NCBI GenBank assembly: GCA_965637545.1
Contig: OZ281496.1
Coordinates: 27,776,001 to 27,840,000 of the forward strand
DNA: 64,000 nt
Direction: 5' to 3'
Source: Phallusia mammillata
Taxonomy: Eukaryota
In this document: positions 6,317 through 27,743 of the stretch, piece by piece
Layout of the letters: each line of letters begins with the position of its first letter
Position numbering within the stretch: the stretch's first letter is position 1
Notes under the pieces: model-generated
Database searches by the model: none
The model's input: the letters and a program-made list of their open reading frames with translations, nothing else
What the model was told of the DNA's origin: nothing
Position numbers and translations under genes: made by a program

Positions 6317-6389
6317 TTTTAATACTAGAACATGTAAAGACAGGATAAGTGCACGTTTACACTGCCTTTCCATGTTGACATTATCAAAA
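6317..6389 (-). ncRNA. Intronic pre-miRNA-like hairpin, copy 4
   Basis: Same hairpin sequence as copy 2. Confidence 0.55.
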
Positions 6390-7045
6390 CCACAATTATA
6401 TTCAAAATTGATGTATAGCAGTTAACATATACTTGCCCTTATCAGTTGACGAAGTCCGCGGTTGGATGAAGAGATCACCGTAGAAAAAAGTGTTTCCTCC
6501 AAATCGATAGCAGACCCTGGAACAGAAACGTAGATCGTGAAATCTGTACAAACTGCACAAATGGCACAAACAAATCGCCCAAGGCTAAGCGGGGGGCATC
6601 CTAAATGGCCTTCAGCATTTAATTAATCATTTGTCGTAAAGTAAAAGTGGCATAGGCAATATTGTGGGGTAAATTACCTGTTTACTGATGAATAAATCGA
6701 TCCCAGCAGTCTTCTTGTAAATGGCGATGGCCTTAAGAGCGAAGTTACTGGAAACTACACACAAAAACAGTTATAGGCGATTTATAGAATGTAAATAAGA
6801 GATTGCTAACCTACATTTGAGGTGGCGTTATAGACGACTACAAAAAAGCGTTTAAGCTTATGGAAGCACAGAAGTTTATAAAAAATGTTTACTTACATAT
6901 ACCTAATGGCTTTCCCATCAAAACATCGAAGTTGTTTTTTCAGTTCCGTCACATCTTCGTCCACTTCAGCTTCAGTTGTTTTTCTGTAAAATGAAAAGCA
7001 AAGCAGCATCAGGACGTCATTAATGGCATCATATTTTACAAAACA

Positions 7046-7118
7046 TTTTAATACTAGAACATGTAAAGACAGGATAAGTGCACGTTTAAACTGCCTTTCC
7101 ATGTTGACATTATCAAAA
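7046..7118 (-). ncRNA. Intronic pre-miRNA-like hairpin, copy 5
   Basis: Same hairpin; G>U variant near the apical stem. Confidence 0.55.
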
Positions 7119-7859
7119 CAACAATTATTATCAAAAATGACGTATAGCAGTTAACATATACTTGCCTTCATCAGTTGGCGAAATTCAGCCGCGGTAGGAT
7201 GAAGAGATCACCGTAGGAACAAGGTTTTTCCTCCAATGCTGTGGCAGACCCTGGAACAGAAACGTAAAACGTAAGATCTCTACGAACTGCCCAAACACTT
7301 GAAATATCGCTGAAGGCGAAGCAGCGCAAGCAGAATGGTCTTCATCATTTAATTAATTATAATTATTCATCATAAAGTAAAGGTAGCATAGGTAATATTG
7401 TTTGTTAAATTACCTGTTTACTGATGAATAAATCGATCCCAGCATTCTTCTTGTGAATGGAGAGGGCCTTAAGAGCGAAGTTTCTTAAACATATAGAAAA
7501 AAAAAACAGTTAAAGGCGATTTATAGAATGTAACTAAGAGATTGCTAACTTGCATTTAGGGTGGAGTTTTAGATGCAAACTGGACTCCTTAATGCCTTTG
7601 CAACCGCAGTTGTATTCTATGTTGTCAGGTGCTTCGTCGACACTGCAAAACAAACGTTTAAGCTTCTAGAAGCACATAAGCTTAAATACACAATGAGCGT
7701 ATAATAATATTTACTTACATATGAAACGATTTCATACCATTTTCCCAATGACTTTCCCATCCAAACAACTTCGTCCGCTTCAGTTTCAGTTGCTTTTCTG
7801 TAAAATAAAAAGCAAAGCAGCATCAGGACGTCATTAATGGCATCACATTTTACAAAACA

Positions 7860-7932
7860 TTTCGATACTGCAACATGTAAAGACAGGATAAGTGCACGTT
7901 TACACCGCCTTTCCATGTTGACATTATCAAAA
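7860..7932 (-). ncRNA. Intronic pre-miRNA-like hairpin, copy 6
   Basis: The 3' arm variant CATGTTGCAGTATCGAAA keeps or improves pairing (C:G, G:C, U:G). Confidence 0.55.
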
Positions 7933-9242
7933 CAACAATTATATTCAAAATTGACGTATAGCAGATAACATATACTTGCCTTTATCATTTGACGAAGTCC
8001 GCGGTTGGATGAAGAGATCACCGTAGAAACAGGTGTTTCCTCCAAATCGATAGCAGACCCTGGAACAGAAACGTAGATCGTGAAATCTGTACAAACTGCA
8101 CAAATTGCACAAACATATCGCTCAAGGCTAAGCGGGGGTACCCTAAATGGCCATCAGCATTTAATTAATTTTTTATTGTGAAGTAAAAGTGGCATAGGCA
8201 ATATTGTGGTGCAAATTACCTGTTTACTGATGAATAAACCGATCCCGGCAATCTTCTTGTAAATGACAAAAAAGGCCTTGAGAGCGAAGTTTCTGGAAAG
8301 TTTAGAAAAACACAGTTAAACGCGGTTTATAGAATGTAACTAAGAAATTGCTAACTTACATTTTAAGGTGGATGCAAACTGGACCCCTTGATGCTTTTGC
8401 CACCGCAGTTGTATTCTATGTTGTCAGGTGCTTCGTCGAACGACTGCAAAAAAGTTTAAGCTTATGGAAGCACAGAAGTGTCTAAAAAATGTTTACTTAC
8501 ATATGATAGATAGTGTTTCATACGATTTTCCCAATGGCTTTCCCATCGAAACAGGGTAGTTGTTTTTAATGCTTCTGATGCTCCGACAAACATCTGCAAC
8601 AAAACTGATATCAGAATTCGGGTTTAACCTAAAATAAGCTAAATACAAGATGTATAACTTCTACCTTTGCTGACCCAATATGCAAACCGCAGTGACATGC
8701 AAAACCGTAAGTGCAACATGCGAAGAACAAGAGGTTTGCTATTCGTTGCAGCAACGGAAAGAATGCCTGCATTGACACGCCTGTAAACAATAAAATTACC
8801 TTCAAATTTTTCGATGTTTTTGAGTTTTTGACGATTCCTTTCTTCTTGAACAAGAGTCACTGAAGAAATAATGCAATTGTAAAACTTTGGCCTTGATGAA
8901 GGCCAAATACAAAGCTTCAAAAATTATAGATTTGAAAAAAAACACAAAACTTACTGAGAAAGACTTGAATTGGTTTTTGCAGGTCTTCCCTCAACGCCAA
9001 CTTTTCTTCACTGCGTGTTACTAAAGAAAGAACGACAAAAGGAAACTTTTGGAAAAATACTAAGCAGCAAGAAAATAAATAGCACCTTGCAAGATCCGAA
9101 TGTGTATTAATTTCGCAGTTACTGAGAAATTATGTCTTGTCAAGATCCAAAGACGCCTGCTTCAGCTTTAGTTGTTTTTCTGTAAAATGAATATCAAAGC
9201 AGAATAAGGACGTCATTATTTGTATCATATTTTACAAAACAT

Positions 9243-9313
9243 ATTCATATTACAACATGTAAAGACATGATAAGTGCACGTTAAACTGCCTTTCCATGTT
9301 GACATTGTCAAAA
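9243..9313 (-). ncRNA. Intronic pre-miRNA-like hairpin, copy 7 (diverged lower stem)
   Basis: Upper stem retained, with several mismatches in the basal stem. Confidence 0.4.
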
Positions 9314-9971
9314 CAACAATTATATACAAAATTGACGTATAGCAGTCAACATATATTTGCCTCCATCGGTTGACGAAATTCAGCCGCGGTAGGATGAAGA
9401 GATCACCGTAGGAACAAGGTTTTTCCTCCAATTCGGTAGCAGACCCTGAAACAGAAACGTAGATCGTAAAATCTGTACAAACTGCACAAACATATCGCTC
9501 GCTCAAAGGTAAGCGGGGTGCACCCTGAATGGCCTTCAGCATTTATTTAATCATTTGTCGTGAAGTAAATGTGTCATAGGCAATATTGTGGGGTAAATTA
9601 CCTGTTTACTGATGAATAAATCGATCCCAGCGGTCTTCTTGTGAATGGAGAGGGCCTTAAGGGCGAAGTTTCTGGAAAGTACAGAAAAAAAAACAGTTAT
9701 AGGCGACTTATGGAATGGAACTAAGAGATTGCTAACCTACATTTAAGGTGGCGTTATAGACGACTACAAAAAAACGTTTAAGCTTATGGAAGCACAGAAG
9801 TTTCTAAAAAATGTTTACTTTCATATACCTAATGGCTTTCCCATCAAAACATCGAAGTTGTTTTTTCAGTTCCGTCACACCTTCGTCCACTTCAGTTTCA
9901 GTTGTTTTTCTGTAAAATTAAAAGCAAAGCAGCATCAGGACGTCATTAATGGCATCATATTTTACAAAACA

Positions 9972-10044
9972 TTTTAATACTACAACATGTAAAGACAGGA
10001 TAAGTGCACGTTTACACTGCCTTTCCATGTTGACATTATCAAAA
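9972..10044 (-). ncRNA. Intronic pre-miRNA-like hairpin, copy 8
   Basis: Same hairpin; the CATGTTGTAG variant adds a C:G pair. Confidence 0.55.
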
Positions 10045-13000
10045 CAACAATTACATTCAAAATTGACGTATAGCAGTTATACTTGCCCTTATCAGTTGAC
10101 GAAGTTCGCGGTTGGATGAAGATATCACCGTAGAAACAAATGTTTCCTCCGAATCGATAGCAGACTCTGGAACAGAAATGTAGAGCGTGAAATCTGTACA
10201 AACTGCACAAATGGCACAAACATATCGCTCAAGGCTAAGCGGGGTGCACCTTGAATGGCCTTCAGCATTTAATTTATTATTCATCTTAAAGTAAAGGTAG
10301 CATAGATAATATCGTTTGTTAAATTGCCTGTTCACTGATGAATAAATCGATCCCAGCAGTCTTCTTCTGGATGGCGAGGGCCTTCTAGCGCAAAGTTTTC
10401 TGAAAATTCTGAAAAAAAGTACCCTAAATGGCCTTCAGCATTCAATTAATCATTTATCGTGTAGTAAAATTGGCATGGGCAATATTATAGGAAAAATTAC
10501 ATAAAATAATAACGTTTATCCTAGACAAGTGTCTTGCCTCTCAAGTTTGTTTACCTGTATATAACATTCCAACGTATGAACCTAATTCCTTCTCGGCATT
10601 TGTTGGCTTCGATACAGGAGAAACGTTGATAAAGAAACGTCTGCAACGAAAGAATCAGGTTTGTACAAACATAATTAAGACTAAACTACAGTTAATTGCT
10701 TAGTGTTATTTATTTAATTGTGGAGATTTCAAACCATGTTGACAACCGAAATATCAGAATGTGACATGCCAAACATGACGTGCAACATGCCAAATCACAA
10801 TGCAAAAATAGAACATTTACTATACTACATGTCTGTCCTATCCTATCAGTCGCCGATTGTGCAGCCGATGCCGAAGTCAACACCAAACATACGTCTTCTT
10901 TGATCGCCCAAGTCTTCACCACGAGGTACTGCAAAAAAAATGGCATATAGCTTTCGGCCCATAGCAAACCAACACCAATGATAAGCTATAAAAAATACTC
11001 AAAACTTGGACATTGTAATCGAGAAACAAATTCAAAGACTCGACTTTTGCAGAAAAAAAGCAGTAAGTTTTCAATAAAGAAAATTACCTGATATTTTTCG
11101 CCGTATAACATCTGCTGTGGGCTTTTTGCATCACCAACTGTTTCACATCGTTAACTGTTCTTTGGCACAATTACCTAACGAAAAAATGACAGATAGCAAA
11201 CAAGCACGTACAAAAATTAAGCAGCAAAAATATGTATTACACAAATGACAGTAAACTTGTCATTACTGAACAAACAAAGAATTTATCAATTATGTGTACA
11301 CATTCTCATGAACAAAACTTACAGACGAGCTGGTGTGACTCGTTTTCGAAGTCTCTGATGAATGCATGCCTCGTTAGGTCACCATCAAGTTCGTGTGTAG
11401 CAAACGAACCTTTCTTTTCCGCTGCTAAGTAATTTTTGGTCGCCTCTTGCCGCCGCTTGTCGTCATGAATTACTAAAAAGGACTCTGATAAGCCCTGGTG
11501 CATAAAAACTTCAAAACTATACAATACGAAACGTTACAGTAAACTTACAGGGGAGATCAAATGTGAAGTCTTCCATGAACGCATGCCTTGCCAATTCCCC
11601 GGCTGCCTGTTGCCCAAAATCACACCGGTTTAAATTAAAGCAAACAAAACTTGTTTAACTCGCCTGTGCAGGTTAATGTTGGTCCGTCATCACAATAAAT
11701 CCAATATTGCGGCAGGCGAAAGGGATTTTTCGTGGAACCTGGAACAAAATGACCCAACTAATTTATCCAAACATTCCAAACAACTTTTTTGTATGCCGGT
11801 GCGTAAGCAACTTAGTGGCCACCCATGTTGATCTCTGTACTCACACCGAACAAGTTCGCTAATAAACACGTTACCTGCATCTTTCACGCTGTATATCATT
11901 TTCGATCGTCTCCAATAGCCAAGCCTTTTTCACCATGAGTTACTAAGGAAAGAATGACAGATTTATAGCCTAAAAACATATCAACCAAACACCAAAAAAC
12001 AAGCTAATACAAAGAGTAACAGTAAAAATTTCCGAAACTTTGCATTACAAAACAGATAAAACTTCCATTAATGTCTGGAAGATATTTAAAAAACCCAGTA
12101 ACACAACTTACAGGCGAATAATTACGTGATTTGGTTTAGCAGCTATATCAGACAGTCACTGATAAAGTGGTGCCTCGTCCTAACCTGCTAAGCTCTTGGT
12201 CAGCGCTCCGATATTCGAAGGTCCTGAAGAAAAATGAGCGTTAATTCGGCAGGACCCCAAGTTGAAACATTGTTTACATACATTTGTCACATACGGATAT
12301 GCATTGGTTTCTCCACTGCTCCTCCAAGTTTCGATAGATTCGAGTTTCGATGGACACAAATCTGCAACAAAACTACAGCAGAAATTGATGTACAAACCTA
12401 ATTACAATTAATTGCTTACTGTCCTAAAACACACGTGGCATGCAAAACATGAAGTGCAGCATGCAGAGCAATAGTGTTTACCATGCTGCAACTTATCGTT
12501 GTCTATGGTTCCGCAAATGTTTACTCCGTGAGACTTAAAAACCAGGTTTACTTAACTTTATCTGTTTGAAATTCCGAAGTATTTTCCCTTTTGGTCTCCA
12601 ACTATACGATCCATGTCTTGGTGCCTTCCTGTAAAAACAAAAACAAAAGCAGTACTAAAGTACGCAACACACATTACTAAATCTAACTTATTTATTATAT
12701 AATATATACGTATGTACTCATGCTCATGCTGACAACTCGTGTGACACGCACCATGCCAAATCACAATGGAAAATTAGTAGGTGACGTGTAACATGCCAAA
12801 TCCACATACTCTATTCGCCAATTATGGGGCCAAGTTTTTAGGCCGTGAAAAAATGTTACTTAACTTCATTCAGCCGGACTAAAATTTTCGTCTTGACTCC
12901 ACGCGACTCGCTGACTTCCTGTAAAACCAAAGCAAAATCAGTACCAAGAAACACAACACAATATTTGACTTAAGTGATACTATAAGTTTTGATTAACATG

Positions 13001-13601
13001 TGAATATATATGTAAACGATATACTATTTTCACATGTTTGTGACTGAATCTAAGCGGTTCAATGCAGGGATTGAATTTTTGAAAATACTCGCCTGCTCGA
13101 TTGTTGTAGCCATGTTTCTTTAATTTGACTGTTTAATGATTATTGGATGCACGAAAATCCAATCAAAACCTAAAACAAAACAATCCAACAGCTGTACTAT
13201 GTATTTGGGAAGCTACGCAAACTTATTTACTACATTTCAATCCGATATCGGTGTAAAAACCAAGTTTAATTTCACATCGGTCCCGACTAAATTTATTTTA
13301 CTTCGTAATAATGAAGTTACCTGCAGATCTCCTTCGCCCGTCCACTTCCGACACTTTTTCTTTTCCTTCCGCCAACAAGAACGTTCGCCTTCCAAACGTC
13401 ACGCGAGTGTTATTTACCCGTCACCAGTTTGTCCGCAGGAACTAAAAAGAATCAAAGTGACAAACATTAATTGTACAACTTCACATCTCGAACACCTTTG
13501 GACAGTGGTTTATGTTGTTCCTGACTTACAATAACAAGAGTAAATATAAAATTGTAAGACACGTATTAAATAAATTTTGCTAATAAATTAACTTTTGCTT
13601 G

Positions 13602-13668
13602 CCAACCTAAGGTTCGAACCTCAATCCTTAAATTCTTTGTACAGCATCTGTACCACTACACTGTGTGT
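13602..13668 (-). mobile_element. tRNA-derived SINE-like remnant
   Basis: Minus strand carries an A-box-like TGTAGTGGTA and a B box GGTTCGAACC; no complete cloverleaf. Confidence 0.35.
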
Positions 13669-14277
13669 GACAATGGTTAAACGTTCCCAAAGTTTTAGTT
13701 TTCTACGTTTAATTGCTGATAGCAGTTGAGGCAGTGGCAATGCAGATAAGTTGTGTCACTGACGGTTGTGGCTCAGGTTTTGTCTAAGAGGGGAATATTT
13801 TTGCTTTTGTTTTTAAGAAACTCACTGAACTATTTCTTTGTCTTTGTTCAGCACTGTTGCAGTGGTCTTTCCAAAACAGGTGGGTTTCTCCTGAAATTTA
13901 TTCAAATATTAATCATTGTAGGCTACGGACTGAAGGAATCAGTTAAACTCTTTGCATGTGATTTTAAACGTGTGAAGTTAAGGATATGTACACGTTAAAC
14001 TATCTTCACATGTTCGTTACTAAATTTAGGCGATTCATATTAGGTATTGAATGAAAATATTTACATGCCTGCTTGATTCTTGTAGTCATGTTTCCCCCGT
14101 TTAACTGTTGATTGATTATTGGATGCACAAATATCCAAACAGAACCTAACACAAAACGATCCAACATGCAATTAGGAAAGCTACGAAAATCTATTGAACA
14201 TATTGTTTTCCGGTATAGACACAGTAACACACAAGTACATCGATACCGATAAGTCGACTTAACCATAACGAAATCAC

Positions 14278-14390
14278 CTGCAGCACAGCACGCAAGTTGA
14301 ACAGCCACCCTCAACGCGAGCAGGAAAAGAAAGAACGACCGATTGCACGCGCCTGAAAAATTTGGTCTCACATGATACCGTTCAATCACA
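14278..14390 (-). promoter_or_regulatory. Candidate TCT/TOP-like start and first exon (paralog of 27124-27290)
   Basis: Minus strand GGTCGTTCTTTCTTTTCCTGCTCGCGTTG...TGCAG|GTGATT. TTCTTTCT fits the YYCTTTYY TCT motif, and a CAAT-like element lies upstream. Confidence 0.4.
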
Positions 14391-15524
14391 GTGCATTACC
14401 CGGGTGTTCGTCAATTGTCCAAAGGCAGGCATTGTTGCGTGAGATAGCAAGTCCTACAGAAACAATATTTTGTAAATATTATAGTATACGGCGACAGGTA
14501 TAAAATTGTGCAGCCATAGATACCCTAGTTTTGACTCGAGATTATTGGCGGTGTGTTGCACTATATAGTATATGACAGCATTGGTCGAAGCTTCCGCTGA
14601 AAAACATAGAAAAATAAGAAAACTTAATATTCGACTTCCGGTAAACGATAGTGCCTCTTTTAAGGTTGTTTAACTTACATTTAACATTTTTCAGTATGAA
14701 TCTAGTTCATGCAGGTTTTGATGGTTTCTAGAAGCTTTGATAGACAACCTCTGCAACATAACGTAGTTATTGAGAAGACACGGCGATTTAATTACTACTG
14801 TTGTGTTCACAGGTTTTATTCTGTCTACTCACAATCAAAACACACGTGACATGCTCACACAAAGTACAGCATGCAACATCACCTTGCAAAACTACGATAT
14901 TCGCTATAATACAATTATACAACTAGGTCGCTAATCGGCAAACCATTAAAAATTTAAACATAAGGTTAACTTAACTTCTTTAATAAGTGTTTTCCAGTTG
15001 AGTTCTCTTAAGTTGTTGGGGTAACACTTTCTACCTTGTTGCCTCGCGCTTTTCCTCCGAAACTGAGAAGTTAAGAAATTGTCCCGTACAGATTGGCTTT
15101 TCCTGACATGTTCGATTAGTCGTTTAGCAAAAATTAGGAAAATCCGGTGAATGCTTCGATCTGTGAATTAAAAAGGTTAAGTATTGTGCAACCTTACTTT
15201 TCCCAGTGAGTCTAACACTAGTTTCCACCAACCTGTGAAGGTTTTATCTGTTGACCAGAAATTCCTACTGTTCTGAAAGACAGCACTGGTCTGAGTTTCT
15301 AAACTAAAGCATAAGCGATAATTATTCTCGGCAAGTGATCGGAGGTTGTACTTACATTTGGCAGTCAGCATATAATCAGATTTTTATGTGGCTTTCACAG
15401 GTTATAATTCTTCGGAGAAACGTTGATAAATAAACACCTGCAACAAAATACAAAGCAGCATTGGATGTACACACATAATTGACACTAAATAACAGTTAGC
15501 TAGCTACTAAAATACGCGGAACAC

Positions 15525-15724
15525 NNNNNNNNNNNNNNNNNNNNNNNNNNNNNNNNNNNNNNNNNNNNNNNNNNNNNNNNNNNNNNNNNNNNNNNNNNNN
15601 NNNNNNNNNNNNNNNNNNNNNNNNNNNNNNNNNNNNNNNNNNNNNNNNNNNNNNNNNNNNNNNNNNNNNNNNNNNNNNNNNNNNNNNNNNNNNNNNNNNN
15701 NNNNNNNNNNNNNNNNNNNNNNNN
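15525..15724. other. Assembly gap (200 N)
   Basis: Run of N. Confidence 1.
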
Positions 15725-16440
15725 CAGTCAACCCTCCAGAGACCAAAGGCTATCCATTTTAACTCAAGTGATGACCTTCATAATAACCAATCAGCTTTTT
15801 AACAGTTAAGGCTTTGGGGATGTTCAGTAGGATAGGAAAATGGCAGCGTGGTAAAATACAAATCTCTTGAGAGATGACCTCACCATTGCTACTGGCACCA
15901 AAAGCACTTACGCCCTGCCGCAGAGATAAAAGTTTGTGAATGGCAGATGTGCGATAATTGAGCGCCTTAAACAATTGGCAAACAAGCCTTGTGGTCTTGT
16001 AATGAGACATTCTGCATGGAAGTGCACTTGGGTAATAATAGTTTCTGAATTTAGGTTTAGTTAACACTTTTAGTTGTTATTCACAAACACAAGCCCAACA
16101 TTTTTAAACTTTTTTACCCTTGCAGAAGCCTTAAAAAAAATATAAAAAAAATATCCAAAAACCATATGCCACATATTTCTCATTTCTAGATAGTTGATTG
16201 TATCAAATACACGGCTAAACAAAATAATAATTATTAGACCAGTGTGTAAACAATAGTCCTCATTTGCAACATTTGATGGAATTTTAGAGTTGTGCTCGGC
16301 ACAGGAGATTATTGCACAATTTGTGTCATTTTTTCTAGCAAACCCCTTTGAGACCATTGTGGTTAAGAAACACTGCACTAGCCAGCAATATGCTGAGAAG
16401 GATAATTTTAACGAACACATGCATGATATAGGACTGAATA

Positions 16441-16623
16441 CAGTAAATCTCTGTTAACCTGGACACGTTTGGACCAAACAATTGTCTGGATTAGGTAAAG
16501 ATCCGGATTAATTGATGTCAATTACTTAAAGCCTTACCACATTAAAAATCATTTGTGTCTCGAGTTTGTCAGAATTAGGCGAAGATCAGGATTAACAGAA
16601 CCCGGTTTAATCGAGATTTTCTG
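16441..16623. mobile_element. Tc1/mariner (pogo/Tigger-type) MITE
   Basis: TIRs CAGTAAATCTCTGTTAA / rc CAGAAAATCTCGATTAA (14/17 match), flanked by TA on both sides. Confidence 0.7.
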
Positions 16624-16826
16624 TAGTTGCATCAGTATTAACTGAACTATCATAAATCTGTGCAGTTAAAAAATCAACGCACATGATAAAAAAAGGGTGA
16701 TTATGTCTGACACTGTGATTAAGACTTTTCAAACACAATCATTGACACAGCCAGCCAAAGCTTAGTTCATGTTGCAATTAATCATACAAAGTAAATGTTA
16801 GTTTTTGGTTTAAGGCAATTACCCAC

Positions 16827-18893
16827 CTTAATAACTTCGTTAACATTAGCCTGGCATGCAACCTGATCGCAGTTGTCAGGCACTGGTAGGAGGGTAGGAC
16901 CGAAACATACCGCTATGTTGTAAGCGTCCATCATATTTTCATCGCTGTTCTGCGACAAACTGAGCAAACAAAATGACAAGTTACTATCTTTGATTTCAGG
17001 TAACATACACATGTTTACATACATTTTCCATGAACTAGTAAGTACTGAAGCTAAGTTTACTATACACTTTGATAAAATAGGCTAGTGATGAATGACTTCA
17101 CATTAAAGTTTACAGTCTATACTTATTTTCTGGTGACTCATGATTTTATTAATACTCATTTACACATTATAAACAGTTTGACTAATATTGACTTATCTAA
17201 TGTCATGTGATGTTTCAGTTAAATCCAACGCTTTATAGGAAACTATTTAATTAAAATTTAAAAATGTGATTAGCATTATCAATTTACATGTATTTTATTA
17301 TTTCTTACTGACACAACTTTTTGCAAACATTTTCTATGAGCCAGGACTGTTTTGTTATTTTATGTATTTTCAAAAATGAATCCACTCTATTTTAATCTTG
17401 GCACTTTTACTAAAATTTCTTGTTTTATTGAAGGCTATAATTTTGCCAGCTAGGGCTGTTGTCAATATTACAGACCACAAATTTGAAACAAAGTTAATAT
17501 CTTACTGGTTTAGGAAGGCAAATAGATATCGCATCACAATCAAGACTGACTCAGGAATGTTGAGAATGATTTGTCGGATTTTTGTCACCCTCTCTTCAAT
17601 GTTGCTAATATCTAAAGAAAAAATTGTTTAAAAATCAGTTAACCACACAAAAACGAAGAAAATTCGACTTTATATTCCACCGACTTATAGAAACATTTCG
17701 GCAAAAACTAAAGAGGTCCTAGTAAAAAAAAAATTTGTTGACAAATTTTAAACTAACTTTTTCCACAATGATCACAGTTATTTTTACATATTTATTTCGA
17801 TCACATACTACTGTGAAAAACAAAGTTAAAAAACCTACGTGCACATTTTTCAAGGTCTTCAAAAATATATTGTGGAAATAGCTTCTCATCTAATTGTCTG
17901 AAATACAGCTTAAGTAATCCTGCAACTGAATTAATATCTGCGTCATCTTCTCGTTCACTGATGGGATCTTCACCAGCTTCGAATAGTCCTTTCATCTCAG
18001 TTATTTCCTGTACAAAATGACAAGGCTTTAATATACTTAATCAACATTGCCGCATGTTGATTAAATTATAGGATAGGGTTACCAGACGCCCAGAGATGTC
18101 CGGAATTCCGGCATAAAATCTGTGACTTTTAAATACACTTGTAATGTCCAAAAAACTGGTAGCCTACAAGTTTTCAAAGTGGCCGAAATTTGCTGGTGTG
18201 ATTCAAGCAAGAGGGAAAATGCCTTATCCTGTTAATATTCAAAACCGATTGATTGTTTTTTCTTTATTTTTAGTGTACACGGATGTTTAAAGCGGTTTAC
18301 AGTTACTGTCGTCTGTGCGGTTTTTGATACACGGTTGTATCAAACACAATATGGCGTCAGTTTAGTATCAAGTAAGGTATTTATTGAAATTGTCAGGAAT
18401 TCAGCCCACTCAGATATGTTAACTGTATTAAACCATTCTATGAATATAGATTATTGATTAATGTACTGATGCTCAAACTTATGCTTGCAGCAGACTGACA
18501 AATATTGTTTTGATTACAAATTTGCTGACCAAAAACAGCACAGTTATATTCAAAGAACTAGATGTACATCAAAATAAACGCCACACCACAAAAGTATTAG
18601 TGCCACAAGAATTAAAATCATTATTCTACCACAAAAAAGTTTTTTCAACACATAGCTTTTTAATTTTGTAAAAATTACAAGGTTTTGCTAAGTTATCGGT
18701 TTATGGTTTTCGCCTGTGAAAAATAATTTAACTGTATTTAAAATTAAAAACCAGCAATTAATTTCTAAATCTTTACACAAATGCTAACCTGGTGTGAACC
18801 AGGAACTCGAAAGATGCCCTGATGGTGAAGGCCGTACAAATTAATGATACGAATGCAACTTTCGACGACAAGTGGAATCGAACGACCAGATTC
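16827..18893 (-). CDS. SRGAP: SLIT-ROBO Rho GTPase-activating protein (SRGAP family), RhoGAP-domain exons only; partial gene
   Basis: Four in-phase GT-AG exons 18789-18893, 17839-18007, 17506-17611 and 16827-16959. They translate to ESGRSIPLVVESCIRIINLYGLHHQGIFRVPGS..GEDP..DINSVAGLLKLYFR..LIVMRYLFAFLNHLSQNSDENMMDAYNIAVCFGPTL..DQVACQANVNEVIK, with the arginine finger intact. No flanking F-BAR or SH3 exons were found. Confidence 0.9.
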
Positions 18894-19439
18894 CTACAAG
18901 TAAGTAGATTGTCAGTACAAGTAAAAATTTGCATAAGGCCTTTACATATGGATGCATAAAGTATAATGTCAATGCAATAGTTGCCAACTTTTTTAGGTAT
19001 ATTAGTCTTATTTAGTATATCATGGTTATAGCCAGGGTTGCCACACCATTCTCATTTATAGGATTTGTCCTTATTTCTAAGAAATGTCCTTGTATGTGAC
19101 TTGGGTCCTTATTTTGTCTTATTTTTAACAATTACAAAACTTCTATCTTGGTAAAATGACAGTCAAATCCCTGCTACAAGTAAAAGTAAACCCTTTGACT
19201 TAAAAAAGGTGACTTGAAAACCAGTTTCAAGCCATGCAATATCAGATAAGTAATCTATGCATTTTGAAATATTTAACTACTTTATGCATCCAATACATAT
19301 TATTTTTTAACAATATATATATGTATATGGTACAGATTTTATTTCTCAAAAACGTTGTTAGGGTCAGTGTACACGAAGTGCAGAATTTTTCTGGGCACAT
19401 ACACTCATGACATTTCACACGAAAATGCATTTTTGTGTA

Positions 19440-22400
19440 ACGTTTGATTTGTCCTGTAATTATTGGTAAGCGGTTACAAAAAAAATTGGGAAATCCTGTG
19501 TATGGTGAAACAATACTTTATGACATACGCACTGTTTGCACTAACCTGTTAAGGATCTGTGGGTCAAAAATCCCGACGATCCTGCAGGACAGCAAATGTC
19601 AAGGCTCTATAGGAAAATATTTAAAATTGGCGATGTTTATAGAAAATACTGAACAGGCGTTTCGTCCACCAGGTTGCATATTTAACAAATTTGTCGTTCA
19701 ACTGGTGTAATGCTGAACAAAATACGATGTTTGCCTGTCCTTGGCATGCAAAAGGATCATTATTCCAAGCTTGTCTACTTACATCTGGCATCTCTGATAC
19801 ACCGGACTCTTTCACAGCTTATGTAAGTTTCTATGCTTTGAAGAAACATTGAAGAAAAATCATCTAAATTAAACGTTTTGATAAAATGAATAATTTCATA
19901 CATTTGTGTGCCTGCCCTCTTGTGGTAGTTTAGGAAATTGAATTCCACTGTATTGTGCATTTCATAGGGATCTACGACCACAAGAAACAATTTTATTTGT
20001 CCGATAGAGAATGGCTTATATTGCCGTGTTCGGCAAGTCGTTTAAGAAAAACCCGTATATACCGGCCACTGCGGATAAAATGCTAAGCTTTGTGCAGACG
20101 TATACTAGTAACGCTGTTTCGCCCTAACCTGTGAAGGATTTAACTGTTGGTTATGAACAGTTAAATCCAATAAATGCTGAGTCAGACAGAAGTGACACCT
20201 TCTTCTGTTCTTGCTTTACTTCTTTTTTCACCACATTGGGCTTTGGTAGGGATTTTTTGCTTCTAAAACTTTGGAAGCCAATTTTTGGCCGCACTTTGAT
20301 GGGTCTGACTGGGTTTTTCCAACCTTTTCCTTGCTTTCATTTCTGAACTTTTATCACTTATTTTTGGTTTGTCAGTTTGCACAGTATTGCTTGTTTGCAC
20401 AGCACTGGTCAAAGTTTCTAAAGGAAAACATTAACGATAGTTATTCTCGGCATCCGTTGCTCAGAGATTGTTTACTTACATTTTGCATGTAAACACCTCA
20501 GTGACTTTTGTAGGTGCCAGTCCTTCGTCGAAACTTTGGTGAACAATCTGCAACAAAACATATAGCAGCATTCGATGTACAAACGAAACTGATACAAAAT
20601 AACGGTTAGTTATCGTTGCATGTCCTATTGTTAGAACACACGTGACATGCAAAAAAGTGCAACATGCCAAATTGCTGTGCAAAAAGTAAATCCTCATTTT
20701 TTTAAAAGTAAACAACTAGGTCGCTGTTTATGTGGCAAACCATTAAACTAAAAAAAGGTTAACTTAACTTTAATGGCTTCGTAGCCCGATCGTACTGCGA
20801 TTTTCCAAAGAAAATAAAAGCCCTTTTCTCGTCTGTAAGGTTTGATTTGTCCTGTAATTATTGGTAAGCGGTTACACAAAATCACTAAAATCCTGCATGA
20901 GCTGAAAAAATACTTTTATGACATACAGCAAAAGCTAACATTGTGCAGCCGTGATTGATATTTTTAGTCAAGGTTATTAGTAATCTGGTGCTGATTCCAC
21001 CAACCTTCCTAGGATTTGACTTGTTGGTCTAGGATCCCTACGATCTTGTTAAGTCATCACAGGTCCAAGTTTCTGAAGGAACACATGAGCGATAATTATT
21101 CTTGGCATGCGACAGAAGGATCGTTGCTCCAAAGTTGTCTACTTACATTTGGCAGTCAGCATATAACCAGATTTCCATGTGGCTTTTGCAGGTTCTAGTT
21201 CTTCGCAGAAACTTTGATGAAGAAACGCCTACAACAAAACGCAAAGCAGCAATCGTTGCACAAACCCAACTGACACTATACAACAGTTAGCTAGCTTCAC
21301 ATGTCTTATTGTGCGTACTAATATTCGGAACAAATGTGACATGTAAATCAACATGCAAACTATAAAGTGCAACATGCCAAGTCACCATGCAAACTATAAA
21401 GCTCGCTAAACTACAACTTAACAACTAGATCGCTGATTAAGTGGCAACCCAAAGCCATGAAATGGTAAAAAGTCAGATTAACTTAACTTCGATCGGTTGG
21501 AAGTCAGGCGGTATTGCAATTAGTGGGCTTTCTGCTGAAACTACAAGAAAACATACACTTTGTTTGTATAGCTTAGCATGTATGATTATTGGTAAGTTTT
21601 CTTACATAATAAGAAAATCCTGTTTATGCTGAAACAAATATTTTCACGACATACATCAAAAGCTAAAAATAGTGCAGTCTTAGTTATGAGCAAGATTACT
21701 GATACTGACTACTGTTGCACCAACTTGCAAAGAATTTGACTTGTTGGTCAAGAATTCCTACGATCCTGCAGGACAGCACAGGTCGATAGTTCTGAAGGAA
21801 AGATACAAAAGTAGCGATATTTAGCATTCTTATCGGCACGTGATAACGACATTTACTTACTACAAACATGTACGCATAAGAACCGAATTTTTCCACTGCT
21901 TTTGCAGGTTTCCATGTTTCGTAGAAACTCTGCAACAAAAAGTAAAGCAGCATTCGATGTTCAAACTTAATTCAGACTAAAGAACAATTAGTTGACTAAA
22001 GGTAAGAACACACGTGACATGCAAAACACAAAGCCAAATCAGCATGCAAAACTGAGATTCTGACGACACTACCACAACTACTAAAGTATATAAATCAACC
22101 CTAAAACCAAAGTTAACTTAACTTCAATCGGTTTGGCTCTGAATTCCGTCTTGGCTCAGCATCTGTCGAGGTCTATAGTGGAAAACGTTAGCGATAGTTA
22201 TTCTCGGCATGCGACATAAGAATCGTTGCTCTGAGGTTGTCTACTTACATTTAACCGTCAGCATATAACCGGATTGCTCCGTGGTTTTCGCTGGTTCCAG
22301 TTCTTCGTCGAAACTTTGACGAACATTCTGTAACAAAACATAGGGCAGCATTCGATATACTAGCACAACTGAGCCCAAATAGCAATAAGTTAGCTTCGAA

Positions 22401-25400
22401 TGCCTCACTGTGCTGAATAGTCAGAAGGCACGTGACATGCAACACACCTGGTGCAACATGCCAAATTGTAAATCTACTAAAAATTATCAACTAGGTCGCT
22501 GCTTATGCAGCCAACCCAAAGCCATGAAAAGTTAAAAAAAAACAGGTCAACTTAACTTCAATTGGTTCGAATTTAGGCCATTTTGCACCCATGTACTGCC
22601 CATTTCCGCGGAAACTAAAAAACATACATTTAGTCTGTATGACTTGACTTGTCCCATAACTATTGGAAATCTCCAGGGTCGATGACTTACATCTAACATA
22701 TCCGCGTATGAACTGCATTCCTCCAGTGCTTTCACAGGTTTCCATGTGATTTTGATCATTCGGAAAGTTGGTTAAGAAAAAATCCTGTATGTGATGCCCA
22801 CTGCGAAAAAAAAACTAATCATGTGCAGCCTTACTTATCTTAGTTTTGTCTTACATTTTGAGTCTACAATAGTGTCGCTGCTTTGTTGGTGCGAGATTCC
22901 TACGCTCCTGTAAGTCAGCAATGGTCGGAGTTCCTGAAGGAAAACATTAGAAATAATTACCCTCACTATGCGAAAAGGATTTGAAATTGTCTACTAACAT
23001 TTGGCGGCAAGCATGTAACCGGATTGCTCCTTGGTGTTTGCTTGTTTCAGTTCTTCGTAAATGTTTCCATGAACAAGCATCTGCAACAAAACCTACAGAA
23101 ACACTCGATGTACAAACCTAATTGCGACTAATGAACATTTAGTTAGCTTTACTTGATATGAAAACACACGTGACATGCAAAACAAGAAGTAGAACATGCC
23201 AAATCACCGTGCAAATCTGCAAGTCTCACCATACTGATTATATTTAACAACTAGGCGATTATGTGGCAAACTTTTTAAAAACCAGGTAACTTAACTTCAA
23301 TCCGTTCGAATTCGAAGTCAGGTCGTATTGCATCAATTAGTGCGCTTTTCCGCGGAAACTAAAAGAACAAGCGTTTTGTCTGCAGATCTTTGCTTCATAA
23401 TTTGCTAATACACTATAATCATTGGTAGGTGGTTACATAAAAAAATATTGCATGTGCTGAAAGAATACTTTTATGTCACACAGCAAAAGCCTAGTATTGT
23501 GCAGACGTAATTGCGCTAAAAAAAAACTCTATATTACTGGTGCTGTTTGTGACCTGTAACGGATATGACTTTTGGTCAAGGCTCTCCACGATCCTGCAAA
23601 ATAGATGAAAATTAGCGATATTTTCCTATCGTTGGCATGAAGCTCTTATCTATACTTACATTTAACACGCAACTAACCGAAACCCTCCATTACAGGTTGC
23701 TTTTCTTCGTAGAAACATCTGCAACAAAACGTAGAGCATGCTGCAGCATTCGATGTACAAACCTAATTGACACTAAAACTACAACTTTAGTTACGGTCAG
23801 AACACACGTGACATGCAAAACGCGATGTGCAACATGCCGAATTACCGTGCAAAATTTCGATTCTCAGCATACTAAGATTTAACAACTAAGTTAGTTCGCT
23901 TGTTGTGCAGCAAACTATATTTAATCTATAGAAAGCTAAAATCAGGTTAACTTAACTTCAATTGATTTGAAGTCTGGTCGAATTTCAGCAATTAGTGTGC
24001 TTTTCCGAGGAAACTAAAAAAACATTTGTATGTGGAGCTTGGCTACTAAGTCCTGTTTTGTTGAAACAATACTTTTATGACACATACAAAAAAAATAAAC
24101 ATAGTGCAGCCCAAGTCTAGATTACAGGCGCTGTTTGCACTAACCTGTCGAGGATTTGACTTGTTGGTCAAGGGTCCATACGATCCTGTAGGACAGCACA
24201 GGTCGAAAGTTCTAAAGGAAAAGATACACACGTAGCGATATCTAACCTTTTTCTCGGCACGCGACAACTACATTTACCTTCTACTAACATGTACGCATAA
24301 GACCTGAATTCGTCCAGTACTTTTGCAGGTTTCCATGCTTCGTAGAAACTCTGCAACAAAACGTAGAGCATGCTGCAGCATTCGATGTACAAACCTAATT
24401 GACACTAAAACTACAACTTTAGTTATGGTCAGAACACTCGTGCCATGCAAGTCACAATGTGCAACATGTCAAATTACTATGCAAACTATAATGCTCGCCA
24501 AACTACAGCTTAAGTAAGTGGCTGATTACAAACCCTGTAGGCTATGACAAAATCAGGTTAACTTAACTTTTATAGTTTGAAGTCAAAAGTATTTTCTCGT
24601 TAAGGTCATCCATCATGTCTAGATGTTTTCCTAAACATAGAAAATCAGATGAAGAGCTAAGAAACGCAATACGCAGTAATAGATCTAGCTTAGGTGTAAT
24701 CAACAATCGGAACACACGTGACATGCCAAACACATAGTGTAACATGCCAAATCGCCGTGCAAAACTGAAATTTGTAATACTCCTAATACTACATGTTAAC
24801 AACTAACTCTTAGTCGCCAATTAAATGGCCAAGTCATTACGAAGCGAAAAGCCTAGAAACCAAAGCAACTTAGCTGAATCGGCTTGGCTCAAAATTCCAT
24901 GTTGCATCTCGGATCTAAGCGACTGTTGTGGCGTTCGGAAAACAAAGACAAAGCAGCAGTACCAAGAAACACAACACAATATTTAATTTAATATATACTA
25001 TACGTTTTATATAACACGTAAATTTAGGATATTTTTACATGCCTGCTTGCCCGTTGTAGTTCAGTAAATTTTTATCATGTTCCCGGTTAATTAAATGTTC
25101 AGATAGCGGTTGAACCATCATTGAATGTCCGAAAGTACAAGAGAAACCTAAAACAAAACGATTAACTATCAACTAATTTGCTGTTGTTATATTTACAGGT
25201 TTTTATTATGCTTACTCATAGTAAGAACACATGTGCCATGCAAATCACGCAGTGCAACATGTCAAGTCACCATGCAAACTACAATGCTCGCTATACTACA
25301 ACTTAACAACTAGGTCGCTGGTTATGCGCAAATCGTAAGCCAAAAACAAACAAACAGGTTAACTTAACTTTTATCAGTTTGAATTCGAAGATGTTTTCCA

Positions 25401-27180
25401 GTTTGGTTCGCATTCGTGATTCGTTGCCTTCCTACAACAAAAGCAGATACAGAAGAAATAAAAGTAACAAGCAGTATTCTAGTATACTTCTAATATTTTA
25501 CAATCTAGTAGTTGGAACACACGTGACATGCCAAACATAAAAGTGCGCAAAATGCCAAATCAGCATGCAACACTGGAATTTATACTAAACTACAGTTTAA
25601 CAGCTAGCTCACGCGCCTAAACGTTTGCGGCGTAAAAAACTTAACTGAATTGGCTTCGCTTGCTTTCGTTTCAATATTTGCTCTAGGCAACTCTTGTTGT
25701 TATCCTGTAAAAACAAAGCAGAAGCAGGACCAGGAACAAAACAAAACATTTGATTTAATTTAGTATAAACTATACGTTTTGATTAACATGCGAATTCAGG
25801 ATATGTGCACGGTATACTATCTTCACATGTTTTAGCTTAATCTAGGCGTTTCGATAAGACGATTGAATATAAATATTTACGTGCCTGCTTGCTTACTGGA
25901 GTTCAATAGTTTTCATGTTTCATGTACTAACTCGGCGGCTTGGACGTCTTGGATGCAAAAGAACACCAACGGAACCTAAAACAAAACAATCCAGTAGCAG
26001 TTGTCGGAAGCAAACCTATACAACAATGGCATACTTATTGTGCCGGTGCGGAAGCCAACTGGTGTGCACCCAAGTTTGCTTCCACATCGATACGGATTAA
26101 TTTAATAAACAACAACAGAATTACCTGCATTTTATCTCGATGCGTTGACGAACAAACATCTGCAACAAACCGTAAGAGCAACATTCGATGTACGAATTTA
26201 TTTGAATATAACTACAATTAATTGACAAGTTTTATTCTGTATACTCCAATTCGGAACGCTCGTGACATGCAAAACACGATGTGCAACATGCTAAGTCGCA
26301 ATGCAAACTAGAATGCTCGCTATATTAAAACTTAACTTGGTCGCTGATTATGCACAAAAAAACATTAAGTCACGAAAAATCACGATTACTTAACTTTTAT
26401 CAAATTGCGTTCCGGCTTGGTTCTCCATTATGTCTTTTTGCTTTCCTATAAACAGAGAAACGTAAGCATAACCAAGAACCGCAATACACAGTATTACATC
26501 TAGCTTATATTAACAATCGGAACACACGTGACATGCTAAACACAGAGTGCAACATGCAAAAACATGCATAACTGGAAAATTATTATGAAGCGAAAAAACT
26601 ATGAAAAAACAAGACAACTTATCTCAATCGGTTTGGTTTGACTTCCATCTTGCATTTCGCATCATCTTGCATTTTGCGTTGCCTTCGAAAAAAAGAATAA
26701 ACAGTACCAACTAACACAAAACAATATTTTATTTTATTTACACTATACGTTTTAAATAACACGTCAAGATAGAATATGTGCAGTATACTACTATCTTCAC
26801 GTGTTTGAGACTAAGTTTACGCGTTTCATTGTATTGATTCATTGTAAATGTTAAACGTGCTTACCGGCTTGTGGGTTCAAGTTTAGTAGTTAGTTTCCAT
26901 GTTTTTAACTGTCAACTAGGCGGTGTAGGTTGAAACAGGCAACAAACGAAACCTAAAACACAACAATCTAGCAGTAGTACCATGTGTTTTGGAAGCTAAG
27001 CAAACTTTTGCAATATCAGCCTACATACAATAAGTATATAGACGCGAAAGCCAACTAGTGTGCACCTAAAATTTACTTCTATACATCCAAAGAAAACAAT
27101 TTACTTTACAACAAAAGAATTACCTGCATAGAACCCAGATGACCATCCACCAGCAACGCGAGCATCAAAAGAAAGAATGA
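19440..27180 (-). ncRNA. Putative multi-exon non-coding host transcript, right paralog
   Basis: Diverged ~300-700-bp exon-intron units. Exon lengths vary and junction-formed stops occur (T|AA, T|GA). Candidate first exon 27124-~27177. Confidence 0.5.
20634..26570 (-). other. Conserved intronic GCAYG/CACGTG element, right cluster (12 copies)
   Basis: Copies at ~20634, 21327, 22006, 22426, 23162, 23800, 24432, 24710, 25225, 25516, 26254 and 26520. Most lie ~75-100 nt upstream of a 3' splice site and downstream of a GTTAAGT-type donor. Confidence 0.85.
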
Positions 27181-27290
27181 CCGACCTCACACGCCCAAAG
27201 TGTGTAGCTTCATTTTTTCTTTTTTCTTTCGACCAATCACAACGCTTGTTGGCGACACGTTACACCAGCGCTTTTTAACCAACCAATGGC
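27124..27290 (-). promoter_or_regulatory. Candidate TCT/TOP-like start, first exon and CCAAT boxes
   Basis: Minus strand GGTCATTCTTTCTTTTGATGCTCGCGTTG...ATGCAG|GTAATT, with CCAAT at 27233 and 27283. Confidence 0.45.
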
Positions 27291-27743
27291 AGGCCTTAAT
27301 ACATCAATTAGCAAACTCCCTGGACTTGCACATGTCCGCGGGAACTAACGAGAACAAAGACACAAGCACTGCCCTGTGGACATTGCCTTTCCGCGTTTTT
27401 CAACTGGTTGGGTTCGAAACGGACTATTATTTATTTTTTTAATGCACAAAATTTTACATTTACTAAATCTAAGAATCGATGTTTTGTCTCTGAGGTAAAA
27501 TATTATTAAATAACAATATCTTTCTGTCTTGCATAACCACTTACACACGCAAATTAAATAGCAACATGTAAAATATGTTTGGAAAACAGTATGTTGTAAC
27601 ATATTGCATAACTATACGATTTTACCAGAATTTTCGATGCCAAAACGCCCGAAAGTGATACCGGTTCCGGCGTTATTGTTCTTACTATTAGCCGACGTAG
27701 AATTCAGATGTGAAAACGGAGTAATTTAAAGCAAGCGACTGAA

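What the first reader, a model, noticed from the sequence alone, without database searches (positions are those of the whole stretch)
8691..26570. About 18 diverged copies of a ~55-nt intronic element with a variable triloop and pair-preserving changes
Seen (minus consensus): UUUGCAYGGUGAUUUGGCAUGUUGCAC-nnn-GUGUUUUGCAUGUCACGUGUGUUC, usually ~75-100 nt upstream of the acceptor, in introns whose 3' parts belong to two unrelated classes. The apical GCAC:GUGU stem closes a freely varying triloop (UAU, UCU, AUC, UGC, AUU, CAG, UUU). GCAUGU:GCAUGU becomes GCAUGC:GCAUG(U/C) at 12430 and 14841, and GCACG:CGUGU becomes GCAUG:CAUGU at 25225. The 3' arm is the most conserved part. It occupies the same intron as the 750-bp hairpin. 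Inference: an older, diverged small-RNA hairpin family or a protein-binding RNA element. The fold is weaker and more bulged than a typical pre-miRNA. From memory, the 3' arm start UUGCAUGUCAC loosely resembles miR-153 (UUGCAUAGUCAC) but the seed differs.
Basis: partly seen in the sequence, partly recalled or inferred. Interest (0 to 1): 0.75.

Follow-up and report, generated by a model that had tools for sequence, protein, structure and literature searches.

The report
Repeated intronic triple-GCAUG splicing module
A 55-base sequence repeated in the short introns of a tandem array of tiny non-coding exons is real and strongly conserved, but it is not an RNA hairpin; it looks like a binding platform (three GCAUG sites plus a GU-rich tail) for Rbfox-type splicing proteins.

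Summary
The window has 16 clear copies, one rearranged copy and one copy cut by the assembly gap, all on the minus strand. The family is much larger: at least 200 copies in 13 one-stranded arrays, all within 25.98-30.43 Mb of contig C3 apart from one stray copy on C2.

The hairpin or small-RNA reading fails. There is no covariation on 16 or on 139 distinct copies. Folding energy is no better than for shuffled sequence (median z -0.4). Rfam gives nothing, even at E <= 1. The arms "pair" only because GCAUGU is nearly self-complementary.

The conserved parts are three (U)GCAUG(U) blocks at mostly fixed spacing (13 and 21 nt) plus a GUGUGUU tail. The element is the best-kept part of the unit (74% identity, against 48% for flanking intron and for exon). 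It sits about 60-90 nt after atypical GUUAAGU donors and about 80-105 nt before the next acceptor. The flanking mini-exons have no consistent reading frame.

Best reading (about 0.5): an Rbfox-type composite intronic splicing module. No binding or RNA data were available.

The scan reached the same reading earlier on other arrays of this family (s1-399110, s1-410980).

The parts
26516..26580 (-). element copy, in the intron leading to an E1-type mini-exon
   Evidence: nhmmer E 2.7e-15; R1 71.7 bits
26250..26317 (-). element copy, after the GTTAAGT donor at 26394
   Evidence: nhmmer E 3.2e-19; donor listed
25511..25581 (-). element copy, after the GTTAAGT donor at 25645
   Evidence: nhmmer E 2.3e-15
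25221..25288 (-). element copy, after the GTTAAGT donor at 25368
   Evidence: nhmmer E 9.8e-18
24706..24773 (-). element copy, after the GCTAAGT donor at 24874; best-scoring copy in the genome
   Evidence: nhmmer E 1.3e-19; R1 87.3 bits
24428..24495 (-). element copy, after the GTTAAGT donor at 24567
   Evidence: nhmmer E 4.8e-18
23796..23863 (-). element copy, after the GTTAAGT donor at 23956
   Evidence: nhmmer E 1e-19; sequence read
23158..23225 (-). element copy, after the GTTAAGT donor at 23295
   Evidence: nhmmer E 1.1e-16
22420..22487 (-). element copy that lacks the first GCAUG block, after the donor at 22556
   Evidence: nhmmer E 7.5e-15; alignment
22002..22060 (-). element copy with the second GCAUG block deleted, after the donor at 22122
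   Evidence: nhmmer E 1.1e-11; alignment
21324..21403 (-). element copy with a 12-nt internal duplication, after the donor at 21487
   Evidence: nhmmer E 5.5e-12; alignment
20630..20693 (-). element copy, after the GTTAAGT donor at 20768
   Evidence: nhmmer E 4.3e-16
15517..15524 (-). last 8 bases (GTGTTCCG) of a copy cut off by the assembly gap 15525-15724
   Evidence: sequence read; followed by the usual class-1 intron tail and acceptor
14834..14900 (-). element copy, after the GTTAAGT donor at 14975
   Evidence: nhmmer E 2.3e-10
12748..12802 (-). rearranged, degenerate copy (two weak fragments), after the donor at 12864
   Evidence: nhmmer E 0.004 and 0.023
12423..12490 (-). element copy, after the GTTAAGT donor at 12556
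   Evidence: nhmmer E 1.7e-14
10753..10816 (-). element copy, outlying
   Evidence: nhmmer E 2.6e-13
8680..8733 (-). partial element copy (second and third GCAUG blocks only), between 750-bp repeat monomers
   Evidence: nhmmer E 3.1e-6; R1 50.6 bits

Best explanation
The element is a composite, RNA-level intronic splicing-regulatory module.

What it consists of:
- Three Rbfox-type sites, UUUGCAUG, UUGGCAUGU and UUUGCAUGU. Start-to-start spacing is mostly 13 nt and 21 nt.
- Each of the last two sites is followed by a CAC.
- A GUGUGUU tail of the kind bound by GU-rich-binding partners: hnRNP M in the mammalian Rbfox/LASR complex, SUP-12/Rbm24-type proteins in worms.

Where it lies: in the middle of short introns of about 220-260 nt, in tandem arrays of tiny exons with no consistent reading frame. 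It comes about 60-90 nt after an atypical GUUAAGU donor and about 80-105 nt before the next acceptor.

Inferred mechanism: in tissues that express Rbfox, binding just downstream of the weak donor helps that donor to be used. This controls which mini-exons of the array are spliced in.

Shown here: the motif content, the conservation above the flanks, the position relative to the splice signals, and the lack of structure.

Inferred only: binding by Rbfox, the effect on splicing, and transcription of the arrays.
For: Motif content (201 copies):
- The conserved columns fall into three blocks centred on GCAUG, plus GUGUGUU. The spacers at positions 22-26 and 41-46 are nearly free.
- 84% of distinct copies keep at least 2 GCAYG and 34% keep at least 3. 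The two commonest single-base variants are GUAUG and GCACG. Both are reported Rbfox motifs (bioRxiv 10.1101/840272).
- The spacing is mostly fixed.

Conservation:
- Among 67 copies less than 80% identical, the element is 74% identical. Flanking intron and exon E2 are each 48%.
- A 291-nt query covering a whole unit mostly recovers only the element part in distant arrays.

Position and host:
- 76% of G[TC]TAAGT donors in the arrays are followed by the element within 20-160 nt. For GTAAGT donors the figure is 7%.
- The host exons have no consistent reading frame.

Literature:
- GCAUG next to GU-rich elements is a described Rbfox/LASR module, and also the worm ASD-1/SUP-12 module (10.1101/2024.07.12.603345).
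- Ascidians have Rbfox1/2/3 and Rbm24/38 genes (PMC10219245).
Against: - No RNA-seq, CLIP or binding data were available, so transcription and splicing of the arrays are inferred from splice-signal sequence alone.
- Conservation reaches beyond the GCAUG pentamers (GUUGCAC, GUCAC). Rbfox alone does not explain that.
- ACAUG and GCAUU, which should bind Rbfox poorly, are also common variants.
- The copies were found through the element itself, which inflates its measured identity.
- An Rbfox gene was not located in this genome. The Pfam Fox-1_C search found nothing, but its controls found nothing either, so it is uninformative.
- The copies are related by duplication, so the counts are not independent events.
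Confidence: 0.5

Rival explanations
1. One reading: a diverged hairpin family, either a small-RNA precursor or a structured RNA element. The GCAC:GUGU, GCAUGU:GCAUGU and GCACG:CGUGU stems would be kept by selection.
For: About 87% of cells in the proposed 15 pairs can form standard pairs. The element is intronic in what looks like a repeated non-coding host, as in known small-RNA host genes.
Against: - The pairing equals the shuffle expectation (86.7% against 86.9%). Only 5 of 2023 cells show a change on both sides, against 5.2 in shuffles. Broken pairs far outnumber compensated ones.
- RNAalifold keeps only 6 pairs, at -3.2 kcal/mol.
- MFE z-scores centre on 0.
- Rfam finds nothing at E <= 1.
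- The only box-C-like stretch (GUGAUUU) lies in the least conserved columns.
Confidence: 0.06
2. The proteins bind as in the best explanation, but the purpose differs. The arrays, with at least 200 modules and about 450 GCAUG sites in a 4.5-Mb domain, would act as a decoy or assembly platform that holds Rbfox-type proteins on nascent or retained-intron RNA, rather than regulating their own splicing.
For: The host exons are non-coding, and the intronic element is the best-conserved part of the unit. The family is confined to one chromosomal domain. From memory: sno-lncRNAs of the human 15q11-q13 region carry GCAUG clusters and sequester RBFOX2 (Yin et al. 2012); I did not check that paper here.
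Against: Sites in short, efficiently spliced introns would be short-lived. There is no evidence for intron retention, RNA abundance or nuclear foci. The tight link with GUUAAGU donors points to a local role in splicing.
Confidence: 0.12
3. RNA-RNA pairing between copies, or with a docking site, as in mutually exclusive exon clusters. The near-palindromic GCAUGY blocks would pair and loop out the exons in between.
For: There is one element per intron in a tandem array of similar exons. GCAUGU is self-complementary if G.U pairs are allowed.
Against: No complementary copy exists on the transcribed strand. The best duplexes between the consensus and the rest of the transcript (-42 kcal/mol) are no better than those of shuffled consensus (-37 to -45). 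There is no covariation.
Confidence: 0.07
4. A DNA-level cis-element, for example an E-box (CACGTG) with octamer-like TTTTGCAT sites bound by transcription factors, repeated along the arrays.
For: CAC(G/T/A)TG and TTTTGCAT are part of the conserved third block.
Against: The central G of the E-box is the least conserved base of that block (135 of 189 copies). The octamer match is imperfect at its first base. The element keeps a constant position and direction relative to the splice signals in two otherwise unrelated intron classes. Because whole units were duplicated, direction alone cannot settle the question.
Confidence: 0.07
5. No function of its own. The element would be a slowly decaying or gene-converted piece of an amplified repeat unit, and its apparent conservation would come from finding the copies through it.
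For: All copies descend from duplications within one chromosomal domain. Copies were ascertained through the element.
Against: Gene conversion would homogenise neighbouring sequence too. Yet in pairs more than 100 kb apart the element is 74% identical and the adjoining intron 48%. A search with a whole unit, which does not favour the element, recovers mainly the element. Within the element, the conserved blocks alternate with free spacers.
Confidence: 0.1

Closest known systems
Rbfox (Fox-1) intronic splicing enhancers with clustered (U)GCAUG, such as the repeated GCAUG downstream of fibronectin exon EIIIB (from memory) and the multiple GCAUG/GCACG motifs in C. elegans xol-1 intron VI (PMC7787662, listed)
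   Same: Several GCAUG/GCACG sites lie within a few tens of bases, in an intron, within 100 nt downstream of an exon with a poor donor. The motifs are conserved above their surroundings.
   Different: Here one fixed 55-nt arrangement is repeated at least 200 times, in arrays of non-coding mini-exons. Known examples are a few sites beside one regulated coding exon. Binding and regulation are untested here.
Rbfox/LASR multi-part modules (GCAUG plus GU-rich hnRNP M sites) and the worm ASD-1/SUP-12 site UGCAUGGUGUGC (bioRxiv 10.1101/2024.07.12.603345)
   Same: GCAUG is combined with an adjacent GUGUGU-type element in one short stretch of RNA.
   Different: The GU-rich tail lies 5 nt after the third GCAUG (GCAUGUCACGUGUGUU), not directly next to it. 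The conserved CAC triplets have no counterpart in those modules. Whether ascidians have a LASR-like complex is unknown to me.
Repeated non-coding host genes for intronic small RNAs (SNORD116/115 arrays, the C19MC microRNA cluster); from memory
   Same: Tandem units of short non-coding exons whose introns hold the conserved part.
   Different: The conserved part here has no stable fold, no covariation, no C/D or H/ACA boxes and no Rfam match.
Docking-site and selector-sequence systems of mutually exclusive exon clusters (Dscam exon 6 type); from memory
   Same: One conserved intronic element upstream of each exon of a tandem array.
   Different: No docking site complementary to the elements was found. 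The exons are non-coding and of several unrelated kinds.

Membership tests
Rbfox-type intronic splicing regulatory element | One or more (U)GCAUG or GCACG motifs | tested here: met
   Three blocks. GCAUG is kept in 64%, 77% and 72% of non-gapped distinct copies at sites 1, 2 and 3. 84% of copies keep at least 2 GCAYG.
Rbfox-type intronic splicing regulatory element | Intronic position within about 300 nt of the regulated exon | tested here: met
   The median distance is 59-92 nt after a G[TC]TAAGT donor and 93-97 nt before the next acceptor. The splice sites are predicted from sequence only.
Rbfox-type intronic splicing regulatory element | Motifs conserved above the neighbouring intron | tested here: met
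   74% against 48% pairwise identity; column profiles. Caveat: the copies were found through the element; one search is free of that bias.
Rbfox-type intronic splicing regulatory element | An Rbfox protein is present in the organism | tested here: inconclusive
   The Pfam Fox-1_C search of the genome found nothing, but it found nothing in the control genomes either. For the ascidian Ciona, an Rbfox1/2/3 gene is reported (PMC10219245).
Rbfox-type intronic splicing regulatory element | Direct binding by Rbfox and Rbfox-dependent splicing of the neighbouring exon | not testable with these tools
   Needs CLIP or gel-shift experiments and minigene or knock-down experiments.
microRNA precursor or other small-RNA hairpin | A stable stem-loop, much more stable than shuffled sequence | tested here: not met
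   Median MFE is -12.3 kcal/mol for the 58-nt core (z -0.37) and -22.4 kcal/mol for 104 nt (z -0.06). No core is below z -3.
microRNA precursor or other small-RNA hairpin | Base pairs kept by compensatory change across copies | tested here: not met
   every measure is at or below the shuffle mean.
   Rfam 15 gives no match at the gathering scores or at E <= 1 over 20500-26700.
Box C/D snoRNA | Conserved C box (RUGAUGA) and D box (CUGA) with a terminal stem | tested here: not met
   GUGAUUU falls in the least conserved columns (22-26). CUGA is absent from a whole subfamily. Rfam is negative.
Docking/selector RNA pairing for mutually exclusive splicing | A docking site complementary to all the selector elements on the same transcript | tested here: not met
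   There is no reverse-complement copy in the window. Duplex energies are no better than for shuffled queries. Only the 40 kb around the array were scanned.

The most novel reading that the evidence does not exclude
The last 6 Mb of contig C3 carry a domain-scale system of at least 13 amplified non-coding host genes. Their main product would be not a small RNA but hundreds of intronic Rbfox-type binding modules. This would be a tunicate counterpart of the RBFOX2-sequestering RNAs of the human Prader-Willi region: it would titrate or concentrate splicing factors, and so set tissue-specific splicing elsewhere in the genome.
Probability: 0.1. Interest if true: 0.8.

Novelty: new variant of a known kind. 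Interest (0 to 1): 0.45.

Why it matters
Clusters of GCAUG are a well-known splicing signal, so the element type is not new. The scale and setting are unusual: one fixed 55-nt module, copied at least 200 times, confined to a 4.5-Mb stretch of one chromosome, and better conserved than the non-coding exons around it.

If Rbfox binding is confirmed, these arrays would be a natural, highly repeated test bed for two questions. One is how Rbfox-type proteins rescue atypical GUUAAGU donors. The other is whether invertebrate chordates use non-coding RNA arrays to buffer splicing factors.

The result also removes a tempting but wrong call of a new small-RNA family.

Tried and rejected
- Hairpin or small-RNA precursor: rejected on covariation, consensus folding, energy z-scores and Rfam.
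- Box C/D snoRNA: the box-like stretches are not conserved.
- Docking/selector pairing: no complementary partner beyond chance.
- Coding exons: E2-type exons and the exons ending in GTTAAGT donors have no consistently open frame, and 17 of 72 and 22 of 101 have stops in all three frames. Two read-through ORFs, one over an E2-type exon at 21.7-21.95 kb and one at 19.8-20.0 kb, have no Pfam hit.
- Rbfox gene in this genome: the Pfam Fox-1_C search was blank, but so were its controls, so this says nothing.
- Same element outside this genome: an exact-pattern scan of the metagenome contigs found none. No other ascidian genome was available to search.
- Literature: no paper in the library holds both 'UGCAUG' and 'ascidian', and nothing relevant came up for Phallusia.
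- Enrichment of Rbfox-tolerated variants among mutated sites: only a weak trend, not used as evidence.
The N gap was not filled.


Full report
OBSERVATION

A 24-nt core of the element matches 11 times in the window with up to 3 mismatches. All matches are on one strand, and none is expected from 100 shuffles. A profile built from 12 copies finds 16 copies (E 1e-19 to 3e-6) plus two weak fragments at 12748-12802. All lie on the minus strand between 8680 and 26580.

I tested the assembly gap at 15525-15724 first, as asked. Reading the minus strand, the first bases after the gap are GTGTTCCG (15524-15517). That is the 3' end of the element consensus. The usual class-1 intron tail and the acceptor GTATTTTGTTGCAG follow. 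So the gap cuts a further copy.

ANATOMY

Aligned over 201 copies from the whole family, the consensus is TTTTGCATGGTGATTTGGCATGTTGCACTTTGTGTTTTGCATGTCACGTGTGTTCTGAC. The information content falls into blocks:
- UUUGCAUG
- UUGGCAUGUUGCAC
- UUUUGCAUGUCAC, followed by GUGUGUU

Start-to-start spacing is 13 nt between the first two GCAUG in 58 of 75 copies, and 21 nt between the last two in 61 of 84.

SETTING

On the minus strand the region is a tandem array of very short exon-like segments of about 40-85 nt, with clear splice signals.
- One kind of exon ends in the atypical donor G[TC]TAAGT, often as GTTAAGTTAACCTG.
- Another kind (E2) follows the conserved acceptor GTTTTGTTGCAG and ends in a consensus GTAAGT donor.
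- The element lies in the short introns that follow the atypical donors, 59-92 nt (median) after the donor and 93-97 nt before the next acceptor.
- Across all arrays, 76% of G[TC]TAAGT motifs are followed by the element within 20-160 nt. The figures are 7% for GTAAGT and 0% for GTGAGT.
- Non-canonical, bulged U1 registers for such donors are documented in human cells (PMC4856993). I did not test this here.

The mini-exons are not coding as a family.
- Among 72 distinct E2 exons, no frame is open in more than 54%, 17 have stops in all three frames, and the lengths are spread over all three residues mod 3.
- The same holds for 101 exons ending in the atypical donor.
- Read-through ORFs over them have no Pfam hit.

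A real RhoGAP domain is encoded by four exons on the same strand at 18893-16785, in the midst of the array. Its relation to the array is unresolved.

Two homologous putative first exons with upstream ATTGG boxes lie at about 27.1-27.3 kb and 14.2-14.4 kb. The window may therefore hold two host transcription units.

THE FAMILY IS MUCH LARGER AND REGIONAL

- A covariance model built from the window copies finds 149 matches in the 240-Mb genome. Of these, 148 lie on contig C3 between 25.98 and 30.43 Mb and one lies on C2. Only the best 150 candidates were scored.
- An exhaustive exact-pattern scan of the whole genome gives 35 matches, all in the same stretch of C3. The reversed control pattern gives none.
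- In the fetched loci I count 201 copies in 13 arrays of 2-30 copies. Each array is on a single strand, always the strand of its splice signals.
- Earlier notes of this scan call the genome the sea squirt Phallusia mammillata. I did not verify that.

IS IT CONSERVED BEYOND ITS SURROUNDINGS?

- Among 67 copies less than 80% identical to one another, mean pairwise identity is 74% for the element core and 48% for the intron on either side. It is 48% for exon E2, 71% for the 28 nt before the acceptor and 67% for the E2 donor.
- Pairs more than 100 kb apart give the same values.
- The copies were collected through the element and the acceptor, which inflates those two values.
- A search with a whole 291-nt unit does not favour the element. 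In most distant arrays it still recovers only the element part, query positions about 103-208.
- In one array the two intron classes share only the core with the second and third GCAUG. That core is the minimal module.

IS IT A HAIRPIN?

No.
- RNAalifold on the 16 window copies keeps only the 6-bp GCAUGU:GCAUGU helix, at -3.2 kcal/mol and with no compensatory pair.
- The same holds on 139 distinct copies aligned to a model built with that very structure, which biases the test in its favour. There, 86.7% of cells pair against 86.9% in shuffles. The covariation score is 0.114 against 0.117. Five cells show a change on both sides against 5.2 expected, and unpaired cells far outnumber compensated ones.
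The commonest state is U.G, from which both C-G and U-A are single changes.
- Folding energies equal those of dinucleotide shuffles: median z -0.37 for the core and -0.06 with flanks, over 172 distinct copies.
- Rfam has no match at the gathering scores or at E <= 1, so the mir-153 resemblance is not supported.
- The arms can pair simply because GCAUGU is almost its own reverse complement.

WHAT IT MOST LIKELY IS

GCAUG and GCACG are the primary Rbfox motifs (bioRxiv 10.1101/840272). The third block, UGCAUGU, is the full heptamer that I recall, from memory, being read in the RBFOX1-RNA structure.
- 84% of distinct copies keep at least two GCAYG.
- The two commonest single-base variants, GUAUG and GCACG, are reported Rbfox motifs. 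ACAUG and GCAUU are nearly as common, so I treat this only as a weak trend.
- GCAUG next to GUGUGU- or GUUGUU-type elements is the multi-part module protected by the mammalian Rbfox1/LASR complex, through hnRNP M. It also recalls the worm ASD-1/SUP-12 site (10.1101/2024.07.12.603345).
- In the ascidian Ciona, Rbfox1/2/3 and Rbm24/38 genes are among cardiopharyngeal genes chosen for study (PMC10219245).
- A cluster of such sites shortly downstream of a poor donor is the classical arrangement in which Rbfox promotes exon inclusion.

I therefore read the element as a composite splicing-regulatory module acting on the GUUAAGU donors of the array, with confidence about 0.5. Binding, splicing and even transcription are inferred, not shown. 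The conserved GUUGCAC and GUCAC parts imply at least one further, unidentified binder.

RIVALS

- Rbfox decoy or assembly platform: the same binding with a different purpose (0.12). This is the most novel reading that the evidence does not exclude.
- Inter-element or docking pairing (0.07): I found no complementary partner and no duplex better than those of shuffled queries.
- DNA-level E-box or octamer-like element (0.07): the central G of the E-box is the least conserved base of its block.
- No function (0.10): hard to square with conserved blocks alternating with free spacers, and with 74% against 48% identity in distant pairs.
- Hairpin or small RNA (0.06).

RELATION TO EARLIER SCAN NOTES

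- A follow-up on the array about 1.05 Mb upstream (s1-399110) reached the same reading, a binding platform rather than a hairpin.
- A first-reader note (s1-410980) describes the array 0.54 Mb downstream as carrying up to three GCATG. I included both arrays in my copy set (loci L014/L030 and L020/L036).
- These are notes from the same scan, not independent support.

LIMITS

- No RNA data and no other ascidian genome were available.
- The Rbfox gene was not located in this genome; the search was uninformative.
- Nothing in the window was taken for human.

Noticed in passing
window 16785-18893, minus strand: A complete RhoGAP domain (Pfam PF00620, profile positions 1-147) is encoded by four exons, at 18893-18768, 18040-17804, 17627-17505 and 17081-16785. 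It lies inside the mini-exon array, on the same strand. Whether the array forms its 5' region or is a separate gene is unresolved.
   Followed up: partly
window 27090-27300 and 14230-14440, minus strand: Two homologous segments (75% column identity) end in TGCAG|GT and have ATTGG (inverted CCAAT) boxes upstream. They look like paralogous promoters and first exons, so the window may hold two host transcription units.
   Followed up: partly
G000 contig C3, 25.98-30.43 Mb: The whole element family, at least 200 copies in 13 one-stranded arrays, is confined to the last 6 Mb of this 32-Mb contig. A single degenerate copy lies on C2 at 5,555,759. An exact-pattern scan of the genome found 35 of 35 matches in this domain.
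   Followed up: yes
window, for example 23741-23768 and 20512-20540, minus strand: The 28 nt before the E2-type acceptor (TCGAATGCTGCTGTAAGTTTTGTTGCAG) are almost as conserved as the element (71% pairwise identity). This is well beyond what a polypyrimidine tract needs, so it may be a second conserved intronic signal.
   Followed up: no
window 26336, 25307, 21422, minus strand: In one subfamily a second GTTAAGT, within GTTGTTAAGTTGTAGT, lies about 20 nt upstream of the element. It could be a decoy donor or a leftover of duplication.
   Followed up: no
window 39869-40153, minus strand (ORFs up to about 42.9 kb): An exon of a type I phosphodiesterase / nucleotide pyrophosphatase (ENPP-like) gene, Pfam PF01663, E 2.5e-8.
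   Followed up: partly
window about 4500-10400: A tandem repeat of about 730-1400 bp, with copies 63-96% identical to the reference copy, fills this stretch. The outlying element copy at 8680-8733 sits in a longer spacer (1382 bp) between monomers.
   Followed up: no
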